From: Macrostomum lignano
Taxonomy: Eukaryota
Reading direction: 5' to 3'
DNA: 60,882 nt
Assembly: GCA_002269645.1 (NCBI GenBank)
Contig: NIVC01000277.1
Coordinates: 171,592 to 232,473, forward strand
Positions within the stretch are counted from its first letter, which is position 1, and each line of letters opens with the position of its first letter. Both the position numbers and the translations under genes were made by a program. Under the pieces are notes generated by a model. The model was not told where the DNA came from. It saw only the letters and a program-made list of their open reading frames with translations, and did no database searches. Of this stretch, positions 1,483 through 60,882 are shown in pieces.

Positions 1483-2663
<1,181 letters not shown>

Positions 2664-3135
2664 CATAAGGCAGTTTGAAACTGCAAACCACGCACTCGGA
2701 AGATATTGAAGGTTACCAGTTGTCGAATGTTCGAAAAAAACCGATATTTCGGCCAGACTGGGCCTTCGTCAGGGTTTATTTATTCGGGTTTAAAAACAAA
2801 TATATTGGCAGTGAAGTTATTGTAACATAATTTCAATATATATATATGCGACTTTTGGGGGTGCACTGAGCAGTGTTGAGTAAAGATGTGTACGCATAAT
2901 TAGTTAAAAACGTGAGTTGAAGCACGCTGATTGGTTAAAGATTGGCAGCTTAAAGCCTTGCACAAAAAATATTAAAGATGTTAGGTGCTATAGAAAAACA
3001 GATTTAGAGCGTAGAAGTGTATGAATAAGCATCTTGAAAAGTTCAACAAATAAGTTATTTACGCCCGTAGAATTGAGAACAAATATTAAATTAAAACAGA
3101 GCACTGAGAACTTTGAGAACTGAGAAAATTGAGTC

Positions 3136-3848: not shown

Positions 3849-3914
3849 CGTGATTTCTGGCTGACTGGATTTGCGTGGGTAAAGAGAGTTATTACTCCAA
3901 ACTAGGATTTAAAC

Positions 3915-9037
<5,123 letters not shown>

Positions 9038-11603: not shown

Positions 11604-11909
11604 TCCTTTGGCAATGCTGGTCACAGTTCTTGAACCAACAGGCACTGTTCTCGAATCTTCTCTGATGCTGGCTTTAGCGACAGAACGATTATTTGGTACT
11701 TTTATTTAACAAAAACTAATTAGCGTGAATTGCCAGTTTCTGATTTTTACAAAACGGAACCATTTCGTCTATGGCTCACCCTATCCATCTAAGACAAATT
11801 GGCGTCTGCAGTGCGTTAATAAAGAACTCAGCCAGCTGAGCTTGGGGACTTTAAAAATAACACTTCCAATTTTATTCTAGTATATTAGATATATATCGAA
11901 CAGGTTAAG

Positions 11910-12851: not shown

Positions 12852-24113
<11,262 letters not shown>

Positions 24114-33500: not shown

Positions 33501-36429
33501 ACTCGGTCGCGAACGGCAGTCTTGGTGAAGGGCCCGGCTCCGATGTGCACCATCTGTGACGTCGGGGAAACCGAGGAGCAGTGATAAAAGTATTGACAAC
33601 CCATGGCTGTGGTACTGGCGTAGGAGTGTACTGGAGCCAGTCGACCCGAAGCCATCGAGTTACTACTAAGCACGCCCACACGTTGCTTTTTACATTAGGT
33701 CTGATTTTCAAGACTCGGTTTTAAGAATTTTTAAGACAACGATGTAGCAACTATGCTGCAAATTCGAATGAATTACCCTCGTGACATAAAATGCCCAGCG
33801 GGATTTCGTGTCTAATACTTCGTGGCTAATATATTAATCTCCAATCCTAGTATCATAGTATCATAGAGAGTCCTCAGTGACACTAGAGAACTCAAATCTA
33901 GGCTTGCGTAGGCCGATGCACCTCAGATTAAGGCTTAAAACCAGCGATCCGGCCTTCATGAGGTTTAGTCCATCTATTCGCTGTCCAACATTAGGTCTCA
34001 CTTAGCTTTCAGAGACGTGAAGCAACGGATTGGGCTCGGATTTCTCACCCCTCGCTGCAGCTCGCCCACGCATCCGTTGTAGAACTCTGAGTCAGCCTGC
34101 GGCGAACCCCAGTTTCCATCGTCGGAGTCCTTTGTGATGAAGCTATATTGGTAAATACAAGTCATGCATGCAGTGTCTTTCTACGACGCACTTGCACTGC
34201 ATATCCACTAGAACGAGAAAGCAAACACTTACCGAAAATCCAGTTTCTCTGCCAGGTAGCGAAGAATATCAACAGCCATACCGTTCAATATTACAGTCTT
34301 GTTGGAAAAAGTGCGATTGAAAATTGTCATAGGAGAACTCTAAAATGATTTGTAAAGCAGAAAATTTAAGTTGCTAGCTGCGATCCAAACCGTATTGAGT
34401 AATTTCAATTAAAAATTATTCATGCACCTCAGGAGAACAAGCCACTATTGTGTCGTTCTTAAACCCCATGAATGTGTTTGGAAAAACCAACTCGATATCT
34501 TTGTACCGAAACAGCAGCCGCATGTTTCCGGTTGATGCGTCAAATTTGACAGACTTTATCATTAAATTTGGAGAGGTTCGAAGTTCATTGTAAGTGGCAA
34601 CCAGTTCCAAGCCCTGCGAGCTGAAGTGCCGGCTAGAGCTATTGTATGAGATGACACCGCGACTCGTGTCATAGTGGCTGATCTGCAGTGAGTGGGGAGC
34701 ACAGTGTTAACAAATGGAACATCGCGCTTGTGAAGCACTCAAGAAAACACTGTTTCTATGTCCTGCTGATGTACAGGTAAATTTCCCATTAAACGTTCTG
34801 TACTGTACAACAGCTCTGTCAAAATTTCAAATATCAAATTTTCAAACTTTTAAGCATCGGCACCAGCAATAGGATATTTGCACCCGCTCACACTGATCAG
34901 TTTGTGAAGCACAGTCGATCCAAAGCTCCACCGCTGCATCGGGAAGCAGGTGGCGTTGCTAGGAGAGAATCCCGGATCCGTTAGAGAATCGTCCAGCGCC
35001 CTGGCCATGGCTTCCACAGCGTCAACGAAGCGAACGTCCATCTCCTGCGTTTTAGGGTTTCAGGTGTAAGTTTGTAAACAAACAAGAAACCTATTGATAA
35101 ATTCACCCACTCCGGCAACAGAAGACTACAATCACAAACCTTAATCCGGTGCAGCTGACATCCGGGAAACACGTCCATCACTGCTGCTGAGCACTCCTTA
35201 AAGACGCCGCCTCTAAGCAGAGCTACATTCGCGTTTGTCGGCGTCGCGCTGAGCAGCTCCGCCTCGGACAGCCGGTGTCCAGCAGCAGCCAGAAATAGTT
35301 CTGCTGCATCACGCCGGCTTCGCTGGCCAGGCTGAGCACGCTGAGCACATTGCGCGGACTGGCGAGCAGCAGCAGCTTGAACACCTTCTTTTTCACAATG
35401 CGTCTCAGGTGCTGCACCAGCTGGGGTGTCACCGATTCGTTGGCAGCCGTGTCCACCTGGAACGTCAGGCTGCTCACTCCGGCAACAGCGAGACCAGACT
35501 GCAGGCTCTGCAGCGACCTCATGCCTTTCAATGGGAAGTCAAGCGGCTGTAAAGAAACTGCAGTGTGACGTCAATCACAGGCATGAACTGTCACTCAACC
35601 AGGGAACTCACTCTGCTGCCTGTCAAACAGAATCGCCACGCTACTGACAATGGAATCGGAAGTGACGGCTTGGACTGCCGCATCCAGCATGTCCGAAAGT
35701 CGGTGGCTGCCCACCACTGTGTGACCTGTTGAAGGAATCGGTGAATGGCTTCAGTGATGGTGCATCAAATGGCGAGATTTAAAAGTGCTGCCTGACCTTT
35801 CAGCAGTGGTTCGGCATCGCACAGGGCCGTCGGCAGGGCGATGAACGGCAGCTTGAGGGACTCGCTGAATGAGGCCAGCTGGTCCAGCAGAGAGCAGCAG
35901 CCCACACCGATGAGGCCTGCTAAGCCGGGCTCTGAGCACACTGCATGTAGGGTGGCGGATTGCTTGGCTGATCAATGATGGATAACTTAAACTGAAATAA
36001 ACTTCCCAGGAAGACATCTTGTCAGTATCAAGACTGTGACAAAGCAAGTTGTCTGTTTCTGGCAGGGTGCAGCTTTATGTCCCGAGGTCAACCATTAGAT
36101 ACGTTTTTACCAGGCACAACCATTCTGTTTGTTACCGGTTGCACAGGTTTGTCACCTTTCAGACAGAAAACCACTCAAAGCCACTCACGAGTTTGCATTG
36201 CAAGCTGCGAGCTGCACCCGTCAACCGTCACGCGCACGAAGGACACCTCGTGATGAGGCAGGACTCGCCAGTTCGAGTTGATCCGCCTGGATGCCGCATT
36301 CTCAATCAGCGACTCGTTGATGAAGCCGTTCTGCACGACCAGTCCGATTTTGAAAGTCAGCGCAGATGAGGCGGACGCACAGATGAGGCAGCTGGCAACG
36401 AACTGGACCAGCGATCTTGAAGCAGTCAT
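30598..36429 (-). CDS. Ionotropic glutamate receptor-family subunit (ATD-S1-M1-M2-M3-S2-M4), divergent; ~854 aa, 12 exons, one apparent 1-nt deletion at ~35271
   Basis: Exons: 36429-36189, 35940-35797, 35725-35612, 35557-35140, 35044-34892, 34682-34428, 34339-34233, 34142-34049, 33553-33136, 32699-32491, 32061-31898, 30844-30598. Sum 2564 nt, or 2565 with one added base. Motifs: signal peptide MTASRSLVQFVASCLICASASSA; FKIG; GMAVDILRYLAEKLDF; YNGCVGELQRG; PFTKTAVRDRVIDYS; LFMPFTYKVWL; SFLQQG; SARAVLASWWFF; PIKTLDDLVTQT; LQKLHESGQIQRWFDIYW..GC; FEGIGG..LLILLLELLW. Confidence 0.92.
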
Positions 36430-37764
36430 GGCTTTCTCGCTTGGTGCTTTACCAGATAGGGCTACAGAGCTACAGATGCAAATGGGGGTGAATCAAGCTG
36501 GCTCAGGATGGAAGGGAGAAGATCCTGAAATAATATTTGCTAGTGCCTGCTGTCAGCCAATCGCAAAGCGCTACTTGAATTGCGGCTTGAAATTTACAGT
36601 AGTTTTATCATTTAAAAATTTATCATCAATTCACCCAATCCGTTCCTCCCGTGCAGCAGATAATTGAGTGGTCAGATGAGCATCTCATATAAAATGCAGA
36701 GTTACGAGAGTAACGAGAGCGCAAAAGCGCATAAATAGGCAGGCCTCCCCCTCACAGTTAAAACCTCATTACTCCGCACCACATACATTGGCAAGCCACT
36801 GAACGCGGCGGAGTAATGGACAAAACAACTACAATTTCGGGACAACTGTAGAGAGTTATTAAACCATACCGTGATGCCCTACTTAAAGTAATATTCTAAG
36901 AAAGTCAATTTATTCTAGAATGAGTCATCTATTTTTAGGAATCACGCGCAAACAGAGTGATTTTGAACCCCACGTGAGAGCAACATTGTTTGATCAAGGA
37001 ATCGGTTTCCAACAGCTGTATTTGCTTCACCCCATTCACGAGTATGGCAATGCTCAAACATACATAACAGCTCAATCAAGCATGAATGACCTAAGTAAAT
37101 ACCCAATTCCAAACCGGTTTTGCCCCAAAATTTTTCTATAAATATAAGTAAAAATCCGAGTAAAAAATTCAGACTCAGAGCGGTCTCTAAGACTCCGAAG
37201 AAACAAAGAAAAAAAGACCAATCTCTGAGGGACCACACGTCCAATTGGTAAGCGTTTACCGGATTCAGTTCTTTGATTGTTAGCGTTAATAAGTTGATTA
37301 ATTGAGTTCACGAGAGCCCTTTGTTGTCGACACATTTGAGAAAAGCCTCCCTGTTTCCTAGGATGTATTCCTAGAGGATTTATTGATTTGAGCTATCCGT
37401 TACGTTTCCGACGTAACGAAGAAGACGCCCCTTCAGGAGGACCCATTGCAGAAACCTAGAGAATTCAATTGTGCATTAAGGCGCACGTTTTATTGTTAAT
37501 TCCGAGTTCGAGGACCGTAGCTCGTAAAGACTTCGGATTCGCTTTCGCTTTTGGTCGATCCACAGATAAAATCAACGACTCACAGAAACATTACCTCACC
37601 GCTGCCGAAACAAGAAGTCAAGAGCTACTAAAGGATCCGCTACAGTAAGAGATATTTGACTTTGCACATGCCGTGGCACTTGTTACCCATTGTCTAGAAG
37701 TGGGAGTTTTTGAGTGACTGATCACCACTCTTAAAATCTACACAACGTTAGCAAAGAAACAGAC

Positions 37765-38973: not shown

Positions 38974-41900
38974 CTACAACTGGCTGTTGCCATGGTGACC
39001 AGCAGTATTTCTGCCGCCGCAGAGGCTGGCAAAGACGGCCAGCTGCTGCCAGAAGGCGGCCGCGTCCTGCAGACAAACCGATGCAGTTGAGGGCAATCCG
39101 AAGGCTGACGAAGCAGAGGGCATCGACAGTGTCGAATGAGGCGGCGGAGGCGGCGGCGGCGGAGGCGGCAGCAGAGGCGGCGGCAGAACGAACGGGGGCG
39201 GTGCGACAAACTAAAATAATTGTGTACAACGTAATGTTTTGCGACGTTAGCTTACTGCCTTCAAGCATATGAAATGGTAAGTTTAAATCCGGATGCTTAT
39301 AAGCACTGCTCAGTCTACTCACCGGAAACCGCGGCAGAGGCACCACAGGCTTGGAGCCGTGGATCAGGGTGCAGCCTGGAATTAAATGAAAGAAGAGCTG
39401 CGTTAGTTGCCATGGAGCGTCCGGTCTTCATTGGGAAGGTTGGGGGTTCGAATCTAGCAGCGGTTCGGTGTAATGATGTGAAATATATATTTACGATGCT
39501 TATTTATACTACTATGCTTCGTTAGAGAAGTGAGAAGTAGCAAGTAAAGCGTATATAGTAATGTTAAAAGTTTCTGCATTTTTCGATTATCAGCCAAACC
39601 GATATGTATCGAAAATTATAAAAATTGCCTTCTTTGTACGAGCTTAGTGCATCACTGCCTCTAATAGAAGAATAATATAGCCAACCAGGAAAACTCAAAC
39701 AAATAAGAATTGGTATTAAAATCTCAAAAAATATAATGCGTCAAATAATTATATATTGCTCAAGCCTACTCTTCTACTAAAAGTAGAATAAAGGAATTCA
39801 TATCATAGTGGAAATTAAACACTTAACCGATATGTATCGAAAAAAATAATAACAAGGCGGAGAAAAACACTAACCCGGTAGATTAGCCAAGAGTCCAAGA
39901 TCCTGCAGTCCGCTCGCATCGCTCCCGATTCCATCTTCGACGGCGTTGTCAAACTCGTTTCCCATCTCTTCGCTGTGGAAATTCTCTTCTTCCGTGGTGA
40001 TTCCGGCTTGCTGTTGAAGCTCGGACGATTCGACGAGCTCCCGGTCGCCGCCGCCGAGATGCCTCTGGCAGTCGGTGGCATTGGCACTGTTGACCTGCTT
40101 GCGCCATCGGGCGCGCCTGTTGCTGAACCAGACCTGCACCTTGGACTCGGACAGCGCCACCGCCGTGGCAAGGGCCTCCCGCATGGCCAGGCTGGGGTAG
40201 TGCGTCTGCTGGAACGCCGCCTCCAGCGCGCGAACCTGCTGGTCGCTGAAAGTTGTCCGGCATCGGCGACCGCTGCCAGATTTCTGCTGCTGCTGCTGGC
40301 TGTTGATTGACAGCTCCGAGTTGTCCGGAGCTTCCAGGCTGGCGACAGCCGCCTCAGCATCGGACGGAGTTGTCGAAGTCACCAGCGAGTTTGCCGGCGG
40401 GCTGCCGTTTCTGCACTGTCGATTGGATGAAGCAACGGCTTCCGCTGCTGGCACCTCTTCTGCTACGAGGCCATCGTTAGAGTCTTCGCATGCGGCGGTT
40501 GAAGAGGCCTGCTGATGCTGATGCTGCTGTCTGAGCTTCTTCTGCTGCGACTGCTGGCCAGCGTCTGCAGATGACGAGCTGTTCGAGTCTGCGAGAGCGC
40601 GAGGTTTCAAATGGCCCTGCCCGTTACCTTTGGCGAATGGGAGAGGCAGAGGCTACACAGAGGGCACAAAGACGCACACAGAGGGACACAGAGGGCACAC
40701 AGAGGGCACAGAGGTACACAGAGGGCACACAGAGGGACACAGAGTACACACAGAGGGCACGCAGAGGCACACAGAGGCACAAAGACGCACACAGAGGGAC
40801 ACAGAGGGCACACAAGAGGGACACACAGAGGCACACAGAGGGCACGCAGAGGCACACAGAGGCACACAGAGGACACACAGAGGGCACACAGAGGGCACAC
40901 AAGAGGGACACACAGAGGCACACAGAGGGCACGCAGAGGCACACAGAGGCACACAGAGGCACACAGAGGGGCACACAGAGGACACACAGAGGACACACAG
41001 AGGGCACACAGAGGGACACAGAGTACACACAGAGGGCACGCAGAGGCACACAGAGGGCACACAGAGGGCACACAGAGGCACACAGAGGGCACACAGAGGG
41101 CACACAGAGGCACACAGAGGACACACAGAGGGCACACAGAGTACACACAGAGGGCACACAGAGTACACACAGAGGCACACAGAGGGCACACAGAGGGACA
41201 CAGAGTACACACAGAGGGCACACAGAGGACACAGAGGACACACAGAGGGCACACAGAGGACACACAGAGGGCACACAGAGGACACACAGAGGGCACACAG
41301 AGGGCACAGAGGGACACAGAGGACACACAGAGGGCACATTCGAACCCCTTCACAATGAAATACCCGCCAAAATCCAGTGAACCACCTCCAACTCATTGCT
41401 ACAGCAGAGAAGCCAAAAGAAAGTGTCAATTATTCATGGCAACTCGCCGCCCCATCTCAAGCTTCAATCAATCAGAGGACGGCTCTGCTACTCACACGCC
41501 TCACGAATCCGATGACTGGCCCAGTTTCAGGCGGTAATCGCATACAAATAGGCATTAACTCAATGCGAGCGTGCGTGAGTCTAGATTAGCTACTTCATAT
41601 ACGAATAGATGAAACAGGTCGAACTCGGTATTTCTCGAATAGTTTCCTATCCCCCCCCAAAGAACACCGAAATCCCCAACGGCAGGTGATGCGACTATGG
41701 CAACAACAAGGGAAACAGGTACATAGAGTAGAGCATAGAGCCTGCATCCTTGTCCAGGTGGTCATATGGCCGCAGGTTTTTAACGCGTGATTGCGCACGG
41801 AGGCACAACTAAGCAGCAAGCGACATGTGTATCTAGCTGAGCATGTGGGCTGGCGGCACCTCAGTTCTCCCTCACTCAATATTCGCCGTCAGCACATGAG

Positions 41901-44900
41901 CACACTGACAGGTTGGTGGAAGAAATAAATGACTTTGCATACAACTTTACAAGCCTAGTTGTTGGCTGTGTTCGGAGCCGCGGCAACTTTAAGTAGAGAA
42001 TTAAGAATCAGTCAAGCAAGCGAACACAACTGACAAAATGCCGGTGTTCAGAGCGTGTTGTATATAAAAGTCAAGGCTGGACAAGCCTCTCTGTGGCCCA
42101 GCGGACAGATGCACCCTGAGGGGTGTATTAGAATCCCAACTGAATGAGGGGAATATATCCCCAGGACAAGATATCTGTGAATAACGCCCATTTAATTGCA
42201 ATTGATTTATTTGAGTCCCCCGTGTGCTTCGTCCACTTTTTTTCTCTCCTACTATAATGACTGATGAAGCGCCCGTGAGGCTGACTGACTTCATCGGAGG
42301 TGTCAAGCTCTTCTTCTGGGCACCGGCGCACAAAAAATAACGTCAGAGGAGTCAAGGCGGCAGGGCAGGCAGTGCAGGAGGGCAGCTCAGCAAGTCAGCC
42401 AGCCATACATCACACCCTTCTGTTGTGGGCGGTGCCTCATGTCAAGGTCCGAACCATCAGCCTCTCATCTTCTCATTGCAGCCTCACCATAATAGCGCGA
42501 TTGATGACGGAGTTTGGAGGATGGTGGAGGGTCCGGCATGAATTTGACAGCCACTGCGCAATCGCGCTTCTTAAAACGCATTAACAGATTTTCACCTGGC
42601 TGGCGAAAGTGTTTTTTTCCTTCATTTGATACTTCACTCCAACTATCTGAAACTCCTAAATTTCAGCTTTAACTGTCTGAATCTAACCACTGATTCTCGA
42701 GTCTCCCTTATCCCTTTTCTTAATCCGACAAACCCTACCTATCTCCCTTATCTCAATCTTAAACAACTCTACATCTCCCTTATCTCAACCCTACATCTCC
42801 CTTATCTCAACCCTACATCTCCCTTATCTCAACCCTACATCTCCCTTATCTCAACCCTACATCTCCCTTATCTCAATCTTAAACAACTCTACATCTCCCT
42901 TATCTCAATCTTAAACAACTCTACATCTCCCTTATCTCAACCCTACATCTCCCTTATCTCAACCCTACATCTCCCTTATCTCAACCCTACATCTCCCTTA
43001 TCTCAACCCTACATCTCCCTTATCTCAATCTTAAACAACTCTACATCTCCCTTATCTCAACCCTACATCTCCCTTATCTCAACCCTACATCTCCCTTATC
43101 TCAACCCTACATCTCCCTTATCTCAATCTTAAACAACTCTACATCTCCCTTATCTCAATCTTAAACAACTCTACATCTCCCTTATCTCAACCCTACATCT
43201 CCCTTATCTCAACCCTACATCTCCCTTATCTCAACCCTATATCTCCCTTATCTCAACCCTACATCTCCCTTATCTCAACCCTACATCTCCCTTATCTCAA
43301 CCCTACATCTCCCTTATCTCAACCCTACATCTCCCTTATCTCAACCCTGCATGTCCCTTATCTTAACCCTACATCTCCCTTATCTCAACCCTACATCTCC
43401 CTTATCTCAACCCTACATCTCCCTTATCTTAACCCTACATCTCCCTTATCTCAACCCTATATCTCCCTTATCTCAACCCTACATCTCCCTTATCTTAACC
43501 CTACATCTCCCTTATCTCAACCCTATATCTCCCTTATCTCAACCCTACATGTCCCTTATCTCAAACCTACATCTCCCTTATCTCAACCCTACATGTCCCT
43601 TATCTCAACCCTACATCTCCCTTATCTTAACCCTACATCTCCCTTATCTTAACCCTACATCTCCCTTATCTTAACCCTACATCTCCCTTATCTCAACCCT
43701 ATATCTCCCTTATCTCAACCCTACATGTCCCTTATCTCAAACCTACATCTCCCTTATCTTAACCCTACATCTCCCTTATCTTAACCCTACATCTCCCTTA
43801 TCTTAACCCTACATCTCCCTTATCTTAACCCTACATCTCCCTTATCTTAACCCTACATCTCCCTTATCTTAACCCCAGAAACCCAACATCTCCCAATCTC
43901 CCAATCTCCGTCCAGCCTCACCGCTGCGCCTCATCAACCGGCTGATGGCGGCCACGCTGGGTGCCGTCCGCTCGTCGCACAGCCCGCCAGCGACCAGACG
44001 AGCCCGAATCTCCCAGGCCGGCAGGCTGGGCTCCCGGGCCCGGATCGCTTGGATTCGCCGATCAACCGGTTCCGCCACGGCTCGCCGGTTGCCGCCGGTG
44101 ACGCCGGGTGTCACCGTTCCTGCCGTGCGCGGACAAGGTGCATGCACGGCTTTACACATGTTTTTCTTCAGCTAAAACTTATACGCCTGAGATCTACTCA
44201 CCTCTCAACAATGTGTCTTCTCTGCTCACTCTTTTCTCATTGTTTTGCATTCTATCCTTCTTGAGATGTATACTTCTAGGCCCGCTCTTTACTTCTCATT
44301 TCTCTGTTTCGCATGATTGTCTCTTTCTCATGGATCTCTCGTCTCTTTCTCATGGATCTCTCGTCTCTTTCTCATGGATCTCTCGTCTCTTTCTCACGGA
44401 TCTCTCGTCTCTTTTGCATAGATCGCTTTGTCTCTTTCTCATGAATCTCTCGTCTCTTTCTCATGAATCTCTTGTCTCTTTCTCATGGATCTCTCGTCTC
44501 TTTCTCATGGATCTCTCGTCTCTTTTTCATGGATCTTTCGACTCTTTCTCACGGAACTCTCATATCTTTCTCAATCTTTTTCTAACTTAAGTAATCCGTC
44601 TAAATATAAATTGTATTATATCAAATACTTATTTTCAAAAGAAGCCTCACCTGTCTCCTGAAACCGTTGCAAGATCTTGCTCACGCATCCGTGACTGACC
44701 CGCAGTCGGCGGCTGATGTCGCAGGGCCGGACGCCTTTGCCAGCCAGTTCGACAATCTGCACCCGGACGTGGTGCGGCAGCGGCCGGCCGTTGATGAACA
44801 CCCCGCCGAGCTGGTTGACCCGGCCTTGGCCTACTGGGCGAACGCGTCAGAGAGCATGCGTGAATTTTTTGTTATTTATAAATTTGTCAATTGTTTTGTC

Positions 44901-50123: not shown

Positions 50124-53100
50124 TGGATTTACAGAGTGCTATTTTGGATTTACAGAACGCCATTTTGGATTTACAGAACGCCATTTTGGATTTACAGAGT
50201 GCCATTTTGGATTTACAGAATGCCATTTTGGATTTACAGAACGCCATTTTGGATTTACAGAGTGCCATTTTGGATTTACAGAGTGCCATTTTGGATTTAC
50301 AGAGTGCCATATTGGATTTACAGAGTGCCATTTTGGATTTACAGAGTGCCATTTTGGATTTACAGAGTGCCATTTTGGATTTACAGAGTGCCATTTTGGA
50401 TTTTCAGAGTGCCATATTGGATTTACAGAGTGCCATTTTGGATTTACAGAGTGCCATTTTGTATTTACAGAGTGCCATTTTGGATTTACAGAGTGCTATT
50501 TTGGATTTACACAACGCCATTTTGGATTTACAGAGTGCCATTTCGGATTTACAGAGCGCCATTTTGGATTTACAGAGTGCCCTTTTGGATTTTCAGAGTG
50601 CCCTTTTGGATTTACAGAGTGCCCTTTTGGATTTTCAGAGTGCCATTTTGGATTTACAGAGTGTCTATTTGGATTTTCAGAGTGCCATTTTGGATTTACA
50701 GAGTGCCCTTTTGGATTTTCAGAGTGCCATTTTGGATTTACAGAGTGCCATTTTGGATTTACAGAGTGCCATTTTGGATTTTCAGAGTGCCATTTTGGAT
50801 TTACAGAGTGCCATATTGAATTTACAGAGTGCCATTTTGGATTTCAGAGTGCCATTTTGGATTTACAGAACGCCATTTTGGATTTACAGAGTGCCATTTT
50901 GGATTTACAGAGTGCCATTTTGGATTTACAGAGTGCCATATTGAATTTACAGAGTGCCATTTTGGATTTACAGAGTGCCATTTTGATTGAATTTACAGAG
51001 TGCCATTTTGATTGGATTTACAGAGTGCCATTTTGATTGGATTTACAGAGTGCCATTTTGGATTTACAGAGTGCCATTTTGATTGGATTTACAGAGTGCC
51101 ATTTTGGATTTACAGAGTGCCATTTTGGATTTACAGAGTGCCATTTTGGATTTACAGAGTGCCATTTTGGATTTACAGAGTGCCATTTTGTATTTACAGA
51201 GTGCCATTTTGGATTTACAGAGTGCTATTTTGGATTTACACAACGCCATTTTGGATTTACAGAGTGCCATTTCGGATTTACAGAGCGCCATTTTGGATTT
51301 ACAGAGTGCCCTTTTGGATTTTCAGAGTGCCCTTTTGGATTTACAGAGTGCCCTTTTGGATTTTCAGAGTGCCATTTTGGATTTACAGAACGCCATTTTG
51401 GATTTACAGAATGCCATATTGGATTTACAGAGTGCCATTTTGGATTTACAGAGTGCCATTTTGGATTTTCAGAGTGCCATTTTGGATTTACAGAGTGCCT
51501 TTTTGGATTTACAGAACGCCATTTTGGATTTACAGAGTGCCATTTTGGATTTACAGAGTGCTATTTTGGATTTACAGAACGCCATTTTGGATTTACAGAA
51601 CGCCATATTGGATTTACAGAGTGCTATTTTGGATTTACAGAGCGCCATTTTGGATTTACAGAGTGCCCTTTTGGATTTTCAGAGTGCCCTTTTGGATTTA
51701 CAGAGTGCCCTTTTGGATTTTCAGAGTGCCATTTTGGATTTACAGAGTGCCCTTTTGGATTTTCAGAGTGCCATTTTGGATTTACAGAGTGCCCTTTTGG
51801 ATTTTCAGAGTGCCATTTTGGATTTACAGAGTGCCCTTTTGGATTTTCAGAGTGCCATTTTGGATTTACAGAGTGCCATTTTGGATTTACAGAGTGCCAT
51901 TTTGGATTTTCAGAGTGCCATTTTAGATTTACAGAGTGCCATATTGAATTTACAGAGTGCCATTTTGGATTTCAGAGTGCCATTTTGGATTTACAGAACG
52001 CCATTTTGGATTTACAGAGTGCCATTTTGGATTTACAGAGTGCCATTTTGGATTTACAGAGTGCCATATTGAATTTACAGAGTGCCATTTTGGATTTACA
52101 GAGTGCCATTTTGATTGAATTTACAGAGTGCCAATTTGATTGGATTTACAGAGTGCCATTTTGATTGGATTTACAGAGTGCCATTTTGGATTTACAGAGT
52201 GCCATTTTGGATTTACAGAGTGCCATTTTGGATTTACAGAGTGCCATATTGAATTTACAGAGTGCCATTTTGGATTTCAGAGTGCCATTTTGGATTTACA
52301 GAACGCCATTTTGGATTTACAGAGTGCCATTTTGGATTTACAGAGTGCCATTTTGGATTTACAGAGTGCCATATTGAATTTACAGAGTGCCATTTTGGAT
52401 TTACAGAGTGCCATTTTGATTGAATTTACAGAGTGCCATTTTGATTGGATTTACAGAGTGCCATTTTGATTGGATTTACAGAGTGCCATTTTGGATTTAC
52501 AGAGTGCCATTTTGATTGGATTTACAGAGTGCCATTTTGGATTTACAGAGTGCCATTTTGGATTTACAGAGTGCCATATTGAATTTACAGAGTGCCATTT
52601 TGGATTTTCAGAGTGCCATTTTGGATTTACAGAGTGCCCTTTTGGATTTTCAGAGTGCCCTTTTGGATTTACAGAGTGCCCTTTTGGATTTTCAGAGTGC
52701 CATTTTGGATTTACAGAGTGCTATTTTGGATTTACAGAGTGCCATTTTGGATTTTCAGAGTGCCATTTTGGATTTACAGAGTGCCATATTGAATTTACAG
52801 AGTGCCATTTTGGATTTCAGAGTGCCATTTTGGATTTACAGAACGCCATTTTGGATTTACAGAGTGCCATTTTGGATTTACAGAGTGCCATATTGAATTT
52901 ACAGAGTGCCATTTTGGATTTACAGAGTGCCATTTTGGATTTACAGAGTGTCATATTGAATTTACAGAGTGCCATTTTGGATTTACAGAGTGCCATTTTG
53001 ATTGGATTTACAGAGTGCCATTTTGATTGGATTTACAGAGTGCCATTTTGATTGGATTTACAGAGTGCCATTTTGGATTTACAGAGTGCCATTTTGGATT

Positions 53101-53430
53101 TAAAGAGTGCCATTTTGGATTTACAGAGTGCCATTTTGATTGGATTTACAGAGCGCCATTTTGGATTTAAAGAGTGTCATTTTGGATTTACAGAGCGCCA
53201 TTTTGGATTTACAGAGTGCCATATTGGATTTACAGAGTGCCATATTGAATTTACAGAGTGCCATTTTGGATTTACAGAGTGCCATTTTGATTGAATTTAC
53301 AGAGTGCCATTTTGATTGGATTTACAGAGTGCCATTTTGATTGGATTTACAGAGTGCCATTTTGGATTTACAGAGTGCCATTTTGATTGGATTTACAGAG
53401 TGCCATTCTGGATTTACAGAGTGCCATATT
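50124..53430. repeat. 21-bp minisatellite (TTGGATTTACAGAGTGCCATT)n, ~3.3 kb
   Basis: Directly visible; 20-bp and 25-bp variant units shift the frame repeatedly. Confidence 0.98.
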
Positions 53431-53874
53431 AATGGGATTTACTGAGCGTCACTTTGGAACTCTAGTATTCTTATTTTTTGCATATTAATACTGCAAAAAA
53501 GATGCCAAATTTATTAGCAAGTCTTTACTACTCAGATCAGTAGTTTATAAGGAAAATTTAAAAGTTTCTCGGTATAAAAATGAAGCTGAAACTAATTGAA
53601 GCACAAGAACAGAAGCAGATTTTATCAAAAAGCTGTAAAAATCAAATGCAGCAGGAAAGCAGTTGGACCACCTTCCAGCTCAAAAAATTCTTTGCATATT
53701 TTTATATTTTGAATAAACTATCGAAAGAAAACCATTAACAAAAAGGTGATAAAGCAAAAAAGAAACGTTTCTATAACAACTAGAAATATTGGGGAGGCAA
53801 GCTTAGGGTGAGACTTTGACATGCGATTGCAGAACGCGACTCTTATTAAATGATATTATCAAATCTGCCTGAAT

Positions 53875-54400
53875 AGTATGACTCTAATAGGGTGAGATTA
53901 TCAAATTCGATTGAATAGAATGATTCTCATAGGGTGAGATTATCAAATCCGATTCGATGGATTGATTCTAATAGGGTGAGATCACCAAATCCGATTCGAT
54001 AGATTGATCCTAATAGGGTGAGAATATCAGATCCGATTCGATGGATTGATTCTCATAGAGTGAGATTATCAAATCTAATTCGATTGATTGATTCTCATAG
54101 GGTGAGATTATCAAATATGATTCGATGGATAGATTCTCATAGAGTGAGATTATCAAATCTAATTCGATTGATTGATTCTCATAGGGTGAAATTATCAAAT
54201 CCGATTCGATGAATTGATTCTAATAGGGTGAGATTATCAAATCCGATTGAATAGAACAAATTTCATAGGGTAAGATTATCAAATCCGATTCGATGGATTG
54301 ATTCTCATAGGGTGAGATTTTCAAATCCGATTGAATAGAATGATTCTCTTAGGGTGAGATTCTCCCAAAAATTGAATGGTCGATTCTCATAGATGAGACT
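53875..54400. repeat. 42-bp minisatellite (TAGGGTGAGATTATCAAATCCGATTCGATGGATTGATTCTCA)n, ~12 copies
   Basis: tagggt at 53888, 53930 and 53972 (period 42). Confidence 0.93.
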
Positions 54401-54511: not shown

Positions 54512-57500
54512 TCAATCAATATTAATAGGCGATTCTGGCACGCCGGATCCACTCGGCTCTGGCGAGCTTCCAGTTGACTGGCTGGCATCGAGATCCACTG
54601 GCGCTAATCGACGTCTGCCGAAACTTTTAAAATTGAAGCTTCGGGCCTGCGGTTTCGACTGCTTCTGCTGCTGTTGGTGCTGCTGCGGACCGGACCCACA
54701 AGCAAACATTTCTGACTGAGCCAAACTGAACAGCTCCGATCGGCCGGCCGCAGCTGCACTAAGCAGGCCAGGCAGAGGCGTCGAGTGGCCAACGGACGAG
54801 GAAGCGGCCGACGTCCAAAAGCAGGGAGTCGATGGCGGCGGCGGTGGATCGACTGACTTCTTTAAACCCGGCAACGGCAGGTATGGACTACGAATCAAGT
54901 TTTCTTTTAGCGCCAAAGGTAACACGGATGTTGGTTGGTTGCTAGGTCGGTTGCTTTCGCTGCTGAATACGGCGGAAGCGTCGACGACGAACGAATTATT
55001 GTTGTCGATGCTGGAGACTTCGGAGAGCTTAAATAGCGGCTGCTGCTGCGGTGGTGGTTTTGCAGTTTCTGTGCCAGCCGAGGCATTGGATAAAGAGAGC
55101 GAACTCAAGGACAACATCTGGCTAAACCGTGGAGCCTGCTGCTGTTCTTGTAGCTTACTTTTGTTGTTGACACCTTCGTCACCACATTGCTCTGTGAGAT
55201 GTTCCTCGGCTGCAACTGGAGTTGGCGCCTGCGATGTGGCTCCTGGGGATTCAAGTTGATCGTTAAAGAAGTGCGGCTCAATATCGCCGGAGGGAACTTC
55301 TGCCATAGTTGACTGCGTGGACGATTTAGCTGCATCAGTCTGCGAGGTTGAAGACTCATTAACCGTTGCATCAGTCGACTTCTCAACTAGTTCATCTGGT
55401 GAAGTATCTCTTGAATAACTTGATCTCGGTACTGAAGCCTCACCAGTGTTCTTGCCTGATGGTTCAGCGTTTGAGTGTTTTGCGCGTAACGACACTGAAG
55501 CCTCAGAGGCAGTTTGACCCGATGACTCAACGATTGAGTGATTTGATGTTGGTACCGAGTTTTCAGCTGTATTTTGGTCCGATGACTTAACAGTTGGTTT
55601 ATATGATGTCGGAATAGAGTTCTGGGATGTAGTATGGCTTGATGGCTCAGCAGTAGGCTGGTGTGATGACTCAACGGTTGAGCGTACCGATGTCGGTACT
55701 GAAACTTTGGAAGAAGCATGGCTTGATGATTCAGCAGCAGACTGGTGTGATGACTCAACGGTTGAGCGTACCGATGTCGGTACTGAAACTTTTGAAGAAG
55801 CATGGCCTGACGACTCAACGGCTAAGCAGTCCGGTATCGTTACCTTGGCAGAAGTCTGGTTTGACGACTCAACGGTTGAGCACTCTGATGTCGGTACCGA
55901 AGCCTTGGCAGAATTTGGACGAGAAGAATCGACAACAGTCAATTCTTCTGTTGATTTTTTCAGCTCCGTGAACTGAATGGTTGACTTGGAGTTTGATTGT
56001 GCAGCAGAAGTTTCATTATGCGTCAGAGCATGGGAGCTGCTCAAAGTGGCCGATGAGGCGGTAAACTTTGACGCAGACAAATCAATCGCACCCAGTTGCC
56101 GACACACTCGACTTCTATTGAATATGGGTGACTGCGGTACAGCATTGAAATCTGTGCTACCTGCTGCATTGTGCGTTGACGAGACTGCCGACTGCCTGCA
56201 CACGGTGGACTTTGAGTCACAAGTCTGTTCTGCTGCATATCTCACATACTCAACAGCTGGGGGAGGCATATCAGGTGCAGTTAATGGGTTTGCGTTGCTG
56301 CACAAAGCTTGGCTGCTCTTGTTAGCAGTGCAATTGGTACTAGCATTTTTCTTGACTTGCACCTCGGCTTCAGAAAATTCCTTCACTGTATTAACAGGCG
56401 GCAAGACTCCCGTTGAATCTAGACCATTAGCAACTGCGAGTGTTAAAGTGCTGTAAGAATCCTCAAGAATTGGCGATGTAATATGCTCCTCATCCAGCTT
56501 CACTTTAGTATTTCGACCATGACAGCTCGATGCAGCGGATGTCTGCGACAGACTTCTCTTCCGACTAGTAGGCGCAACAGATAGCGTAGCGCTTTGTGAC
56601 TCGCACGTGAACTCCTCATTTGGACTTCGAATCAAGTCAGTTGAGCCTCCTGTCTGAGAAAAACGAGCTGCATTTTTATCAGAATTCTGAGACAGTATCA
56701 GCTTTTCCAGAGTCTCATAGACAGAAGTAGTCGCGGGAGACTCAAATGACGGCTCTTTCAGAATCTTCTTGTCCAGAGTCTCGTAGACGGAGGCGTTCGC
56801 GGGAGACTTGAATGAAGAAGCTTTCTGAGTCTTCTTGTCCAGAGACTCGTAGGCAGAAGCATTCGCGGGAGACTCAAACGACGGCTCTTTCAGAATCTTC
56901 TTGTCCTGAGACTCGTAGGCAGAAGCATTCGCGGGAGACTCGAATGACGGCTCTTTCAGAATCTTCTTGTCCAGAGACTCGTAGGCAGAAGCGTTCGCAG
57001 GAGACACAAATGACGGCTCTTTCAGAATCTTCTTGTCCAGAGACTCGTAGGCAGAAGCATTCGCGGGAGACTCGAATGACGGCTCTTTCAGAATCTTCTT
57101 GTCCAGAGACTCGTAGGCAGAAGCATTCGCGGGAGACTCAAACGACGGCTCTTTCAGAATCTTCTTGTCCTGAGACTCGTAGGCAGAAGCATTCGCGGGA
57201 GACTCGAATGACGGCTCTTTCAGAATCTTCTTGTCCAGAGACTCGTAGGCAGAAGCGTTCGCAGGAGACACAAATGACGGCTCTTTCAGAATCTTCTTGT
57301 CCAGAGACTCGTAGGCAGAAGCATTCGCGGAGACTCGAATGAAGAAGCTTTCTGAGTCTTCTTGTCCAGAGTCTCGTAGACGGAGGCGTTCGTGGGAGAC
57401 CCAAATGAAGAAGCTTTCTGAGTCTTCTTGTCCAGAGACTCGTAGACAGAAGCATTCGCGGGAGACTCAAATGAAGAAGCTTTCTGAGTCTTCTTGTCCA

Positions 57501-60500
57501 GAGACTCGTAGACAGAAGCATTCGCGGGAGACTCAAATGAAGAAGCTTTCTGAGTCTTCTTGTCCAGAGACTCGTAGACGGAGGCACTTGCAGTAGACTT
57601 TAGCAGAGACTCTTTGTAAACTTTTCTGTCCAGAGACTCGTAGGCAGAAGCGTTCCCAGCAGACTCTGACGAAGACTCTTTCTGCATTTTGGCATTCAGA
57701 AGGCTATCAAGCCTCGTGGCCGGCGATCTAGCAAACATTGGAGTATCCGATCTTGAGAAGGCTGAAGAAGGCCTATCCGGTAGGCACTTGTCGATAGCTG
57801 GGAAAGCTTCATCAAGCGATTCGTTGGGAGCAGCGGTGGTGTCGGAGCTCGGTCCAGCAGCTGCCGGAGCTGCGCCACCCGGTGCCAAGGACTGCCAATA
57901 GGACGGAGCCTCGCTACGCAACCGATTCATCGTTGACATAATGGATTGGTATTTGCTGCTCAGAGTGTTCAGCTGGGCGGCGTAGGAGCTGCTTGGCACT
58001 GACTTCGGTGGCAATGGCTGGACGCGCGGCGACAGGGGTACAGGAGACGGCGGCGGAAATGGTGGCGACTGAGGCAGACGCGGTGGTCTTGAAGATTCAT
58101 CAGTGATGAAGTTCTTGGCTACGGTGAACTTGACATTCGAGGAAGTGGTTACAGATGATGTTGATTTAGCTGCTGTTGTTATTGCTTTTGTTTCTGCTGT
58201 TGCTGCTGTTGTTTCTGTTGTTGTTATTGTTGTTATTGTTGTTATTGTTGTTGCTGTTGTTGTTGTTTCTGCTGCGGCTGCTGATTGACTGCCAGTGTTC
58301 ACAAGCTTGGCCAGATCCGGGAGGCGGCTGTGGATGTAGCGGGACTCCGATTCCTTTAGGCTGAGAGCTGGAAAACAAGGAATAAAAGTAGGAACTGCGT
58401 GGGCTTATTGTGTAAAAACTCTTAGTAATCATTATTATTAAATTCTGTGGGCTTCAAGACATCAGAGATATACTATGTAGATGTTAGATTGATATCAGAT
58501 ACATGTACACGCTAGATAGATATCAATGATATTAGACAAATGTTGGATAGACATGAAATATAAAATTTATAGATACTAATTGGACACAAAGTACGCTCCC
58601 ATTAGATGTAAAAACAGTCTTACTAGCAAGCAGTTTGGCACCGTGAGCCGTCGCTTCAGCTCGGGTGCTGTCGTTCAACAGTAGCACCTGAAGTTGCAGG
58701 AGTCCAACGAATGCGAGCTTGCCTCGAGTCAGTTGCAGCTTCTCTGTTGCCATAGTAACACTCAGACCGATTAGTTCGGGCATTCGAAGCAATTCCCCGT
58801 CCGAGTTGATGATTTTGCTACAAATGAGAAATAATGAATTGCTGACATGAAGTTCATAAAAGTTTTAATCTACACTGAGGTGGTACGAGTCAATTTGCCC
58901 CAGTCTCACTTGATGCAGTAGGCCTGAAACTCAATTGCTGCTTTGGCAATTGGCCAACAGAAATCTTTGCAAGCGGCTAGTCGAGTCAGCTGTTCCAGGG
59001 CGCCGGTGAACTGACCGAGGCCCTTGATGTAGGACACGATTGAAAAGCGAAAACTGAGGTACCTGCCGATGGCGGAGTCCTGCAGCTGCGGGTTGTTGAG
59101 GAGATCAAAACTTGACAAAGAACTTTTGTCGAGGTTCCGAAATCACGAAATCAAATATCCTTCCCAGTTCTAAATCCCAACGCCGATTAGAAATCTCGAT
59201 TTGAAATCCCAGAAATCAGCTTTATAGATTTTGAGGATGGATTAACTCATTGTAGATAAACCTTAGCTATTCACGATGGAAATACATGTAAAATATAGAA
59301 ATAAAGTTTTTACAAACAAAAAAGGTTCCAAAATCGATTATGACTTATCAAGGTCAACGAAAATATAATATAATAACTAATAAGGATGATAAAATATTTG
59401 ATTACACCTGTCCTAATGGGCAGATGTGCAACCGACAGCTCAGCCGCAGCTATTGCGCGGCGCATCTGAAGGCTGCGTACGGCTGTTCAGTCCAAGGACT
59501 GGGGGGTCGCCACACACACCCTCAATTACCCCAGCTAATGCTGGCACCCATTTTACAGCTGGGTGAACTGAAGCAATGCAGAGTTAAGTGTCTTGCTCAA
59601 GGACAATAATTGTTCCGAATGGGTCCAGAATCGAACCCCCGACCTTTCAGTCGCGAGTCCAAGGGGATATCGTCCTACAACCAGCACTGAGACAATTCTG
59701 CCCATTCCGCTACTCCTGAGCCAATAATGTACGGGCACGCACTCACAGGGTGTAAAGTGGCCCTGACTTTCTAAATGTCAGACATGAATGTGGCCACAAA
59801 CCACGGTAACTATATATTATCTCCCATACACCCGCTGTCATTGCATCCCGCTCTCACCTCATTAGCCATCCCGGCAACAGTGACTCCAGTAGCAATGGAT
59901 TCTTTGCTGCCCTCCTGAAGCAGAGTCTCAGCGTATAGGCGCAACAGGATCGCCTGAAAGAATCGGTTCAATGGTTATTGAAAAATGCTTTCATTTTAAA
60001 ATACTCAGTCTCTTTCATAGAGAGAGAGAGTGAGAGAGAGAGACAGTACCTTATCGAAGCTGGCCATGCGCACTGAGGAGCTTTTTGCCAGATTAAATGC
60101 AACGCTGAGCCAGTGAATGGCGTCAGAAAATTTTCCATCTTGGAAGCGTTGCAGCCCGAAGCGGTAGAGCAGGCTGATAAATCGGAGCGACTGGTTTATT
60201 GGCAGGTTGGAGTAGATTTATAATAACGTAGGTTGGATTGTTAGATTGGTAGTTGGACACGTCGGTAGATAGTTAAGTAGTTTTATATTTAGGTATGTCG
60301 ACAGTTTAACAAATTGGTTGCTGGGTAGTTTGGTAGTTGGGTAGGTTTGTTTTTGGGTAGGTTGGGTGCTAGGTAGGTTGGGTGCTAGATGGGTTGGTTG
60401 TTGGGTAGGTTGGGTGCTAGGTAGGTTGGGTGCTAGGTAGGTTGGGTGCTAGATGGGTTGGTTGTTGGGTAGGCTGGGTGCTAGGTAGGTTGGGTGCTAG

Positions 60501-60835
60501 GTAGGTTGGGTGCTAGATGGGTTGGTTGTTGGTAGGCTGGGTGCTAGGTAGGTTGGGTGCTGGGTAGGTTTGTTGGTTAGGTTGTGGTTGTTGGGTATTG
60601 GGTAGGTTGGGTGTTGGTTAGGTGGTTAGGGGTTATGGTTGTTGGCAGCATTGATAGATCTATGTTGGCAACTGTGTTGGGTAGATAAGCACTGCGTCAA
60701 GCGGTAGTCAGCCATTAACTTACGTGCATATTGAGTTTAGCATCGCTAACTAAATCTAGCAGAAGATTCTCATAGTCCAATCCTTGTGATCTTTGTTCTG
60801 CCGTCCATCTGGAAAGCATTAGTTTGAAACCATAA
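54512..60835 (-). CDS. TEX11: TEX11/Zip4/SPO22-like TPR protein (5' end outside the window) with a ~1280-aa low-complexity C-terminal exon; one apparent 1-nt deletion at ~57330
   Basis: Exons: 60835-60724, 60190-60050, 59953-59858, 59085(or 59079)-58910, 58817-58624, 58367-54512; phases consistent. Spliced peptide LLYRFGLQRFQDGKFSDAIHWLSVAFNLAK..KAILLRLYAETLL..AGMANELQDSAIGRYL..ALEQLTRLAACKDFCWPIAK parallels my recollection of TEX11 (CYNFG..KYEESSFWLSQSYDIGK..KVLRLLATNYL..NLANKEHLSSPGLFL..LDFCLNIAK). The gene is well supported; the family assignment is from memory and needs an HMM check. Confidence 0.7.
56700..57660 (-). repeat. Coding 66-bp (22-aa) tandem repeat, 15 copies: SFESPANAS[A/V]YE[S/T]LDKK[ILKEP/TQKAS]
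   Basis: Period 66 measured (cttcttgtcc at 56831 and 56897); 15 YE[ST][LQ][DE][KR]K units counted across the two ORFs. Confidence 0.95.
59400..59700 (-). mobile_element. tRNA-derived CORE-type SINE (MIR-like core), in an intron of the TEX11-like gene
   Basis: Minus strand: tRNA-like head with B-box GGTTCGATTC (plus 59629-59638), then CCTTGAGCAAGACACTTAACTCTGCATTGCTTCAGTTCACCCAGCTGTAAAATGGG (plus 59547-59602). This aligns with the MIR/CORE consensus as I recall it (CCTTGGGCAAGTCACTTAACCTCTCTGAGCCTCAGTTTCCTCATCTGTAAAATGGG). Boundaries approximate. Confidence 0.75.
59715..59786 (+). repeat. Short interspersed repeat fragment, related to 20757-20830
   Basis: See the 20757-20830 alignment; abuts the SINE head. 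Confidence 0.65.
60335..60640. repeat. ~16-bp degenerate minisatellite (GGTAGGTTGGGTGCTA)n, intronic
   Basis: Directly visible. Confidence 0.88.
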
Positions 60836-60882
60836 CTGTAATACTACGTCTATTTAGTGCAATAGCGGTTAGGCTGTATGCT

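What the first reader, a model, noticed from the sequence alone, without database searches (positions are those of the whole stretch)
54512..60835. TEX11/Zip4-like meiotic TPR domain joined to a ~1280-aa disordered tail instead of the usual further TPR repeats
Seen: five short helical-looking exons splice in phase into one 3.86-kb terminal exon of Ser/Thr/Pro/Ala-rich sequence that ends at a stop at 54512. Established: TEX11/Zip4/Spo22 are TPR scaffolds of the ZMM crossover pathway, and TPR-like sequence continues well past the SPO22 region to the C-terminus. Inference: here the C-terminal TPR half seems replaced by a very long unstructured tail with internal repeats, i.e. a lineage-specific paralog or chimera with a new architecture. 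The family match is from remembered sequence (YxFG..K[FY]..[AS]..WLS..[FY].[LI][AG]K; LRL.A..L; DFCxxIAK).
Basis: partly seen in the sequence, partly recalled or inferred. Interest (0 to 1): 0.72.

Follow-up and report, generated by a model that had tools for sequence, protein, structure and literature searches.

The report
Flatworm TPR-like gene with disordered tail
This is a real, already annotated but uncharacterised gene of the flatworm Macrostomum lignano that joins a helical-repeat domain, only weakly TEX11/Zip4-like, to a low-complexity tail of about 1,280 residues. The copy in this window is cut off by the end of its contig and has three single-base deletions that look like assembly errors.

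Summary
The exon chain is real. The window is the last 60.9 kb of M. lignano contig NIVC01000277.1, and the locus is already in GenBank as hypothetical protein PAA86506.1 (Mlig015105.g6).

Three corrections are needed:
- **Not the 5' end.** Sibling copies encode about 290 further N-terminal residues, so the helical domain is about 425 aa (about 20 helices).
- **Frame breaks.** This copy has 1-bp deletions at ~60799, ~60782 and ~57331. The last one splits the 3.86-kb exon into two frames. A near-identical twin contig and a third copy are intact (1284 and 1262 codons), so these are most likely assembly errors.
- **TEX11/Zip4 membership is unproven.** Pfam SPO22 is the top hit but scores only 15-19 bits against a cut-off of 27.5. 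It covers a third of the model, and the second half of the helical region gives no independent hit.

The tail is S/T/P/A-rich, is predicted to have no structure, and contains a 14-unit 22-aa tandem array. No TPR exons lie downstream; the next gene on the strand is a Pax gene. This is a lineage-restricted TPR-like scaffold with a long disordered tail, of modest interest.

The parts
60724..60808 (-). It is 85 nt here and 87 nt in the intact copies, and encodes MDGRNKDHKVLDYENLLLDLVSDAKLNMH. This copy has 1-bp deletions at ~60799 and ~60782. The annotated partial CDS of PAA86506.1 starts at 60771.
60050..60190 (-). Exon 8 (141 nt), SLRFISLLYRFGLQRFQDGKFSDAIHWLSVAFNLAKSSSVRMASFDK. It has a clear TPR-type motif and is the core of the weak SPO22 match. 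The acceptor AG is at 60192-60191, not the 60174 site I first assumed.
59858..59953 (-). Exon 9 (96 nt), AILLRLYAETLLQEGSKESIATGVTVAGMANE.
58910..59085 (-). Exon 10 (176 nt). It is helical and gives no independent Pfam SPO22 hit.
58624..58817 (-). Exon 11 (194 nt). It is helical and its donor is in phase 1.
54512..58367 (-). Exon 12, the terminal exon. It holds the last helix of the solenoid and then the low-complexity tail. It has 1284 codons in the intact twin copy. In the window a 1-bp deletion at ~57331 breaks it into 359 codons (stop at 57288-57286) plus 938 codons in the next frame. The stop TGA is at 54514-54512.
56702..57666 (-). Array of 66-bp (22-aa) tandem units, 14.6 copies ([AE][SP]SFESPANAS[AV]YESLDKK[TI][QL]K). 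It has the same length in the twin copy L003 and one unit fewer in L002. The annotated CDSs skip 3-8 units through gaps that lack GT-AG ends: window 57513-57185 (which hides the frameshift) and 57028-56831.
55634..55817 (-). Repeat of 84 bp (28 aa) x 2.2, inside a longer degenerate Ser/Thr-rich repeat zone (SVPTSxxSTVESSxQ...).
58171..58274 (-). ACA/ATA-type microsatellite read as a Thr/Ile/Ala-rich stretch (TTTTATTITTITTITTTETTAATAE).
60314..60627 (-). Satellite of 16/64-bp units in the intron between exons 7 and 8. Most length differences from the twin contig lie here.
59440..59740 (-). SINE-like insert of about 300 nt in the 772-nt intron between exons 9 and 10. It is not part of the coding sequence.

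Best explanation
The finding is one of three near-identical assembly copies of a transcribed 12-exon Macrostomum lignano gene (transcript cluster Mlig015105; this copy is g6, PAA86506.1).

The protein has three parts:
- An acidic, Ser-rich N-terminal segment of about 120 aa, encoded outside the window.
- An all-alpha, TPR-like solenoid of about 425 aa (about 20 helices). Its second half is encoded by window exons 7-12.
- A Ser/Thr/Pro/Ala-rich intrinsically disordered tail of about 1,260 aa, encoded by the rest of the terminal exon. It includes a copy-number-variable array of 22-aa units.

Most likely mechanism (inferred): the helical-repeat domain is a protein-docking scaffold, and the tail offers many short linear motifs (25 SP, 15 YxxL, 12 PxxP). 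The whole would then act as a multivalent, probably phospho-regulated hub.

Its relation to TEX11/Zip4 is at best remote and is not shown. The window copy is truncated by the contig end. Its three frame-breaking 1-bp deletions are most likely uncorrected long-read assembly errors in a redundant contig, not biology.
For: Shown:
- The window is 100% identical to the end of NIVC01000277.1.
- Three GenBank proteins, PAA86506.1, PAA58640.1 and PAA61232.1, use the same exon junctions.
- That annotation is a genome-guided RNA-seq assembly with TransDecoder ORFs. The assembly is Canu on PacBio reads polished with Pilon, and it has 180 Mb of redundancy at >=95% identity (PMC5730564).
- Outside satellites, the window differs from its twin contig L003 by 7 indels and 1 substitution in 6.9 kb. 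All three CDS differences are deletions in the window.
- L003 and L002 keep the long exon open for 1284 and 1262 codons.
- Both sides of the 57331 shift read the repeat in the same register.
- AF2 in single-sequence mode gives 20 helices for the N-terminal part, with pLDDT up to 77. For 729 aa of tail it gives no secondary structure at all, with mean pLDDT 34.6.
- Composition contrasts sharply: 37% hydrophobic and 1% Pro in the N-terminal part, against 20% hydrophobic and 57% STPAGQN in the tail.
- There are weak TPR signals: TPR_3, and designed consensus TPR in the PDB at E 0.05. The top Foldseek matches are TPR proteins, but none is significant.
- The ORF is open for 142 codons from the acceptor to the first in-frame ATG at 57939. 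An SL-donated ATG would be out of frame at 58367.
- A HMMER scan of 1.84 billion cluster representatives (50% identity) with the first 359 aa of the long exon found only this M. lignano cluster, plus two weak low-complexity hits.

Inferred: the scaffold/hub function.
Against: - No functional or expression data were found for Mlig015105.
- Both structure models were made without an alignment and have low confidence, so 'TPR-like' rests on helix pattern and weak motif hits.
- SPO22 is consistently the top Pfam hit and is placed sensibly. About 165 helical residues precede it, as in TEX11, and the helical region ends about where the 274-position model would end. A true TEX11 relationship is therefore not excluded.
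- The deletions could be real mutations in one gene copy. No reads were available to check.
- The copies are too similar for a dN/dS test of the tail: there are no substitutions in the long exon.
Confidence: 0.5

Rival explanations
1. One reading: the gene is a genuine TEX11/Zip4/Spo22 family member, either the flatworm ortholog or a paralog. It keeps the N-terminal TPRs and the SPO22 region but has replaced the C-terminal TPR half with a long disordered tail. That lost half includes the WN patch that binds Ecm11/TEX12. The protein would act in the ZMM crossover pathway with altered coupling to the synaptonemal complex.
For: - SPO22 is the best Pfam hit in every construct (E 1e-3 to 1e-2). It outranks generic TPR models by about two orders of magnitude.
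- Reversed and shuffled controls give nothing.
- The geometry fits. The match maps to profile positions 35-128 at P0007 residues 326-410. About 165 helical residues lie upstream, and the helices end near residue 549, where a 274-position domain would end.
- Canonical Zip4 has 21 TPRs over its whole length and a C-terminal WN patch (PMC8763056). Neither is present here: the only WN is at residue 182.
Against: - The score is below Pfam's gathering threshold (15.4-19 bits against 27.5).
- Only a third of the model is matched.
- Exons 10-11 alone give no SPO22 hit.
- No Pfam hit is on record for the annotated product.
- There is no PDB or fold-level support.
- No reciprocal search was possible, and no expression data were found.
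Confidence: 0.3
2. The window copy (g6) is a real, decaying duplicate. The three 1-bp deletions are genuine mutations, and this locus would then encode only truncated products.
For: - There are three frame-breaking deletions in 3.5 kb of CDS, while two other copies are intact.
- The DV1 line carries extra large chromosomes and many duplicated blocks.
Against: - Indels outnumber substitutions 7 to 1 outside satellites, and the CDS has no substitutions at all relative to the twin. That is the signature of long-read consensus error, not divergence.
- The 938-codon frame downstream of the shift is still fully open.
- The copy lies at a contig end.
- Two of the three deletions are in short homopolymers.
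Confidence: 0.12
3. These are two genes merged by the annotation: a TPR-like gene that ends after exon 11, and a separate tail gene joined by read-through or by an unprocessed trans-splicing precursor.
For: - About 7% of assembled M. lignano transcripts are precursors that encode two or more proteins, and some transcripts were merged across repetitive gaps.
- The annotated CDSs contain non-canonical gaps in the array.
Against: - The 256-nt intron has GT-AG ends and a polypyrimidine tract, and it joins the two exons in phase.
- The frame is open for 142 codons between the acceptor and the first ATG.
- An SL ATG at this acceptor gives MLSA-stop.
- The last predicted helix of the solenoid spans the junction (residues 529-549; long exon starts at 525).
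Confidence: 0.05

Closest known systems
GenBank PAA86506.1, PAA58640.1 and PAA61232.1 (hypothetical proteins BOX15_Mlig015105g6, g5 and g4, Macrostomum lignano, assembly GCA_002269645.1)
   Same: It is the same gene. PAA86506.1 is annotated on the window DNA itself. The other two are the twin copy and the third copy. All have identical exon junctions and the same C-terminus...ESPINID.
   Different: - The deposited CDSs are partial.
- They skip 3-8 units of the 22-aa array through non-canonical gaps, so the deposited tail is 1108 aa against 1262-1284 genomic codons.
- They carry no domain or functional annotation.
TEX11 / Zip4 / Spo22 (Pfam PF08631 SPO22; ZMM crossover scaffold)
   Same: It is a helical TPR-type repeat protein. 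The best, though sub-threshold, Pfam hit is SPO22, centred on exon 8 and exon 9, and it sits at a plausible position within the helical domain.
   Different: - The score is below the family cut-off and only a third of the domain model is matched.
- There are about 20 helices instead of 21 TPRs spanning the whole protein.
- There is no C-terminal WN patch.
- Long disordered regions flank the solenoid: about 120 aa on the N-terminal side and about 1,260 aa on the C-terminal side.
Generic TPR docking scaffolds (LGN/GPSM2, kinesin light chain and similar)
   Same: They are arrays of helical hairpins of similar size used for peptide docking. They are the commonest top Foldseek matches.
   Different: There is no significant sequence or fold match (E >= 3e-3, TM <= 0.35, from a low-confidence model). 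The resemblance is at the level of fold class only.

Membership tests
TEX11/Zip4/Spo22 | SPO22 domain (PF08631) at or above Pfam's gathering score | tested here: not met
   With the true splicing or the full protein the score is 15.4-19.0 bits (E 1e-3 to 1.3e-2) against a cut-off of 27.5. Only profile positions 35-128 of 274 are matched. It is still the top hit, and it is absent from reversed and shuffled controls.
TEX11/Zip4/Spo22 | TPR repeats along the whole protein (21 in yeast Zip4; PMC8763056) | tested here: not met
   Helices cover only residues ~124-549 of P0007 (about 20 helices). The remaining ~1,080 residues of P0007 (1,262 codons in its genomic locus L002) are low-complexity and have no predicted structure. 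No TPR-like ORF lies downstream before the Pax gene.
TEX11/Zip4/Spo22 | Conserved C-terminal aromatic-Asn (WN) patch that binds Ecm11/TEX12 | tested here: not met
   The only WN in P0007 is at residue 182, in the N-terminal helices. There is none in the C-terminal two thirds. The feature is taken from PMC8763056.
TEX11/Zip4/Spo22 | Reciprocal best hit with TEX11/Zip4, or a profile-profile match | not testable with these tools
   No TEX11/Zip4 sequence could be fetched.
TEX11/Zip4/Spo22 | Meiotic or germline expression and ZZS partners (SHOC1/Zip2, SPO16) | not testable with these tools
   Mlig015105 is not mentioned in the searchable papers or in the supplements I checked.
TPR-like alpha-solenoid (fold class) | Tandem helix-turn-helix hairpins of about 34 aa with the TPR residue pattern | tested here: inconclusive
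   - TPR_3 gives E 0.03-0.17 on exon 8.
- Designed consensus TPR in the PDB matches at E 0.05 over three repeats.
- AF2 gives 20 helices of 13-21 residues, but mean pLDDT is 48.8.
- Foldseek top hits are mostly TPR proteins, and none is significant.
Intrinsically disordered low-complexity region | Composition bias, no predicted secondary structure, no domain hits | tested here: met
   - The tail is 57% S/T/P/A/G/Q/N and 20% hydrophobic.
- There is no credible Pfam domain.
- AF2 gives mean pLDDT 34.6 and no DSSP element over 729 aa. This was in single-sequence mode, which is a caveat.
Mlig015105 gene cluster (GenBank hypothetical proteins) | Identity to the deposited records | tested here: met
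   The window is 100% identical to L001, the locus of PAA86506.1. The protein maps exon by exon.

The most novel reading that the evidence does not exclude
The gene is the Macrostomum ZIP4/TEX11 homolog, or a neofunctionalised paralog. It has lost the C-terminal TPR half, which normally links crossover designation to the synaptonemal-complex central element, and has gained a fast-evolving, repeat-bearing disordered tail. This would have happened in a recently polyploidised flatworm, where control of pairing and crossovers between duplicated chromosomes is an open question (compare wheat ZIP4-B2/Ph1).
Probability: 0.2. Interest if true: 0.6.

Novelty: new member of a known kind. Interest (0 to 1): 0.3.

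Why it matters
As it stands, this adds a domain-level description to an uncharacterised flatworm gene: an N-terminal disordered segment, a TPR-like solenoid, and a disordered tail of about 1,260 aa with a variable 22-aa array. It also flags errors in one assembly copy and in the deposited CDSs. If the weak SPO22 signal proved genuine, it would be an unusual half-length ZIP4/TEX11 lacking the module that binds the synaptonemal complex, in a neopolyploid animal that can be tested by RNAi and transgenesis. Meiosis researchers would care about that. The present evidence does not carry that claim.

Tried and rejected
- **Wrong first splice model.** I first used acceptor 60174 and a tiny MLNSICT exon. 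That raised the SPO22 score to 23.2 bits. I rejected it once PAA86506.1 and PAA58640.1 showed the acceptor at 60192-60191 and exon 7 at 60808-60724.\n- **Word-index homology searches.** Searches with the spliced N-terminus and with the tail found nothing.
Full report
**What is in the sequence**

On the minus strand, short exons at 60190-60050, 59953-59858, 59085-58910 and 58817-58624 are bounded by GT-AG introns. They join in phase to a long terminal exon that starts at 58367 and ends at the TGA at 54514-54512. The short exons encode hydrophobic, proline-poor, helix-type sequence. The long exon encodes Ser/Thr/Pro/Ala-rich sequence: 57% S/T/P/A/G/Q/N and 20% hydrophobic, against 37% hydrophobic in the short exons.

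The long exon holds several repeats:
- a 66-bp (22-aa) tandem array of 14.6 units at 56702-57666;
- an 84-bp x 2.2 repeat at 55634-55817, inside a degenerate Ser-rich repeat zone;
- an ACA/ATA microsatellite read as a Thr/Ile run.

The 729 non-repetitive codons at the 3' end are open in one frame only.

**Where it comes from, and independent support**

An iGluR exon elsewhere in the window is 98% identical to a Macrostomum lignano UniProt entry. A full HMMER scan with the first 359 codons of the long exon found one strong hit, P0004. P0004 is GenBank PAA86506.1, 'hypothetical protein BOX15_Mlig015105g6, partial [Macrostomum lignano]'. Its cluster mates are PAA58640.1 (g5, 1632 aa) and PAA61232.1 (g4, 844 aa).

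The locus of PAA86506.1 is the last 16 kb of contig NIVC01000277.1 of assembly GCA_002269645.1. It is 100% identical to the window, and window position 60882 is the contig end. All three deposited proteins use exactly the junctions above, including 58624->58367.

That annotation is a genome-guided RNA-seq transcriptome (StringTie/TACO plus a mapped de novo assembly, with ORFs from TransDecoder). The junctions are therefore transcript-derived rather than ab initio (PMC5730564).

**Corrections to the observation**

- In the g5 and g4 copies the gene has 12 coding exons. The window holds exons 7-12 only.
- About 290 further residues lie upstream of the window: an acidic, Ser-rich stretch of about 120 aa, then about 170 helical residues.
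- Exon 7 is 60808-60724. Compared with the twin contig, the window lacks one base at ~60799 and one at ~60782.
- Those two deletions are why an ATG at 60819 appears to open the frame. The intact reading is ...EIWF|MDGRNKDHKVLDYENLLLDLVSDAKLNMH|SLRFIS....

(2) The 3.86-kb exon is not one ORF in this copy.
- A third 1-bp deletion (CCC->CC) at ~57331, inside one 66-bp unit, shifts the frame. The upstream frame stops at 57288-57286, and the rest (938 codons) runs in the next frame.
- Both sides read the repeat unit in the same register.
- The twin contig (L003) and the third copy (L002) have uninterrupted long exons of 1284 and 1262 codons with the same C-terminus.

**Error or pseudogene?**

Outside satellites, the window and L003 differ by seven indels and a single substitution in 6.9 kb, and the CDS has no substitution at all. 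The two contigs stay collinear for 13.7 kb. The assembly was made from PacBio CLR reads with Canu and polished with Pilon. It is known to contain 180 Mb of near-identical redundancy, where short-read polishing is weakest. The window copy also sits at a contig end.

Uncorrected consensus errors are therefore the most likely cause. A genuinely decaying copy is the minority alternative. Only reads can settle it.

The deposited CDSs also skip 3-8 units of the array through gaps that lack GT-AG ends. In the window copy one 329-nt gap silently hides the frameshift. This looks like collapsed-repeat transcript mapping rather than splicing.

**One gene or two?**

Several points argue against an annotation fusion or an unprocessed trans-splicing precursor, which is a known issue in this species:
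- The 256-nt intron before the long exon has canonical ends and a pyrimidine tract.
- The frame is open for 142 codons between the acceptor and the first in-frame ATG at 57939.
- The M. lignano spliced leader ends in ATG (PMC8629364), but it would read MLSA-stop at this acceptor.
- The last predicted helix of the helical domain (P0007 529-549) lies at the start of the long exon (residue 525).

Downstream of the stop there are only satellites and about 5 kb of unique DNA with no TPR-like ORF. Next on the same strand comes a Pax gene, with a PAX domain at E 5.5e-33 and a homeodomain at E 3.9e-22. No hidden C-terminal TPR exons exist in the window.

**What the protein is**

AlphaFold2 without an alignment predicts 20 helices of 13-21 residues over P0007 124-549. 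Confidence is low (mean pLDDT 48.8, up to 77 in the first helices). Under the same conditions, 729 residues of tail give no secondary structure at all and mean pLDDT 34.6.

Exon 8 fits the TPR residue pattern. TPR_3 matches at E 0.03-0.17, and designed consensus TPR proteins in the PDB match at E 0.05 over three repeats. Foldseek returns mostly TPR proteins (LGN, KLC, SPY, NatA), but none is significant. 'TPR-like alpha-solenoid followed by a long disordered tail' is the best description.

**Is it TEX11/Zip4?**

In favour:
- Pfam SPO22 (PF08631) is the top hit in every construct, and reversed or shuffled controls give nothing.
- The placement is sensible. About 165 helical residues precede the match, and the helices end about where the model would end.

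Against:
- With the true splicing the score is 18.1-19.0 bits for the domain and 15.4 bits for the full protein, against a gathering score of 27.5.
- Only profile positions 35-128 of 274 are matched.
- Exons 10-11 alone give no hit.
- Canonical Zip4 has 21 TPRs over its whole length and a C-terminal WN patch that binds Ecm11/TEX12 (PMC8763056). Neither is present here.

I could not fetch any TEX11/Zip4 sequence for a reciprocal or profile-profile test. I also could not ask whether M. lignano has a second, canonical SPO22 gene. Three defining features were tested and not met, and two could not be tested. I therefore do not file it as a TEX11 family member. I put the chance of true homology at roughly 0.3.

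**How it probably works (inference)**

A helical-repeat docking module is joined to a very long, repeat-bearing disordered region with 25 SP, 15 YxxL and 12 PxxP motifs. This is the anatomy of a multivalent, probably phospho-regulated scaffold.

The tail appears lineage-restricted. Its first 359 residues have no detectable relative among 1.84 billion cluster representatives (50% identity) outside this M. lignano cluster. The 22-aa array differs by one unit between copies, so it evolves by unit gain and loss. The copies are too similar for any test of selection. I found no expression data for Mlig015105.

**Verdict**

The gene is truncated by the contig end and is frame-broken in this copy. The architecture claim holds. 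The TEX11 label is only a lead. The gene model has been public since 2017 as a hypothetical protein. It is best called a new, uncharacterised member of the broad class of TPR-type scaffolds with disordered tails. Interest is modest unless the SPO22 signal is confirmed by profile-profile and ortholog analyses.

Noticed in passing
window 39873-44846 (minus strand): A Pax gene lies directly downstream on the same strand. Paired-box ORFs are at 44619-44846 and 43872-44171 (PAX, E 5.5e-33 and 2.6e-14), and a paired-type homeodomain exon is at 39873-40610 (E 3.9e-22).
   Followed up: partly
window 30601-36664 (minus strand): An ionotropic glutamate receptor gene. Exon 33131-33679 hits Lig_chan and is 98% identical to M. 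lignano UniProt entry A0A1I8JLH1. This identified the organism.
   Followed up: partly
window 13836-22389 (minus strand): A fibrillar collagen gene. It has a COLFI C-propeptide (E 2e-13) and unusually long Gly-X-Y exons, interleaved with minisatellites.
   Followed up: no
window 1483-9034; 50124-53427; 53851-54361; many others: Tandem-repeat load is extreme. Examples are (ATAG)n of about 7.5 kb (1883 units), a 21-mer satellite of 3.3 kb, a 42-mer satellite just 3' of the gene, and many (GTCA)n, (AGAC)n and (ACTA)n arrays. This fits the reported 15% of the M. lignano genome made up by simple and tandem repeats.
   Followed up: no
window 59440-59740: A SINE-like insert of about 300 nt in the intron between exons 9 and 10. 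It occurs once in the window. ARAGORN calls no tRNA and there is no Rfam family at gathering score.
   Followed up: partly
window 57513-57185 and 57028-56831; L002 16641-17102; L003 15665-15862: The deposited CDSs of all three gene copies skip 3-8 units of the 66-bp array through gaps without GT-AG ends. This is probably an artefact of collapsed repeats in the transcript assembly. In the window copy the 329-nt gap masks the 1-bp frameshift.
   Followed up: yes
tool behaviour (against 37, 39): The word-index protein search returned nothing for queries that are identical over hundreds of residues to three GenBank proteins held in the same collection. Its negative results for this locus should not be read as absence.
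   Followed up: partly
L002 5294-7144 and L003 5128-6978 (opposite strand, upstream of the gene, outside the window): A 616-aa gene with no Pfam hit on record is the upstream neighbour in both full-length copies.
   Followed up: no
window 10042-11645 (minus strand): GC-rich overlapping ORFs of 247-404 aa with no convincing Pfam hit. They may belong to another, unidentified gene.
   Followed up: no
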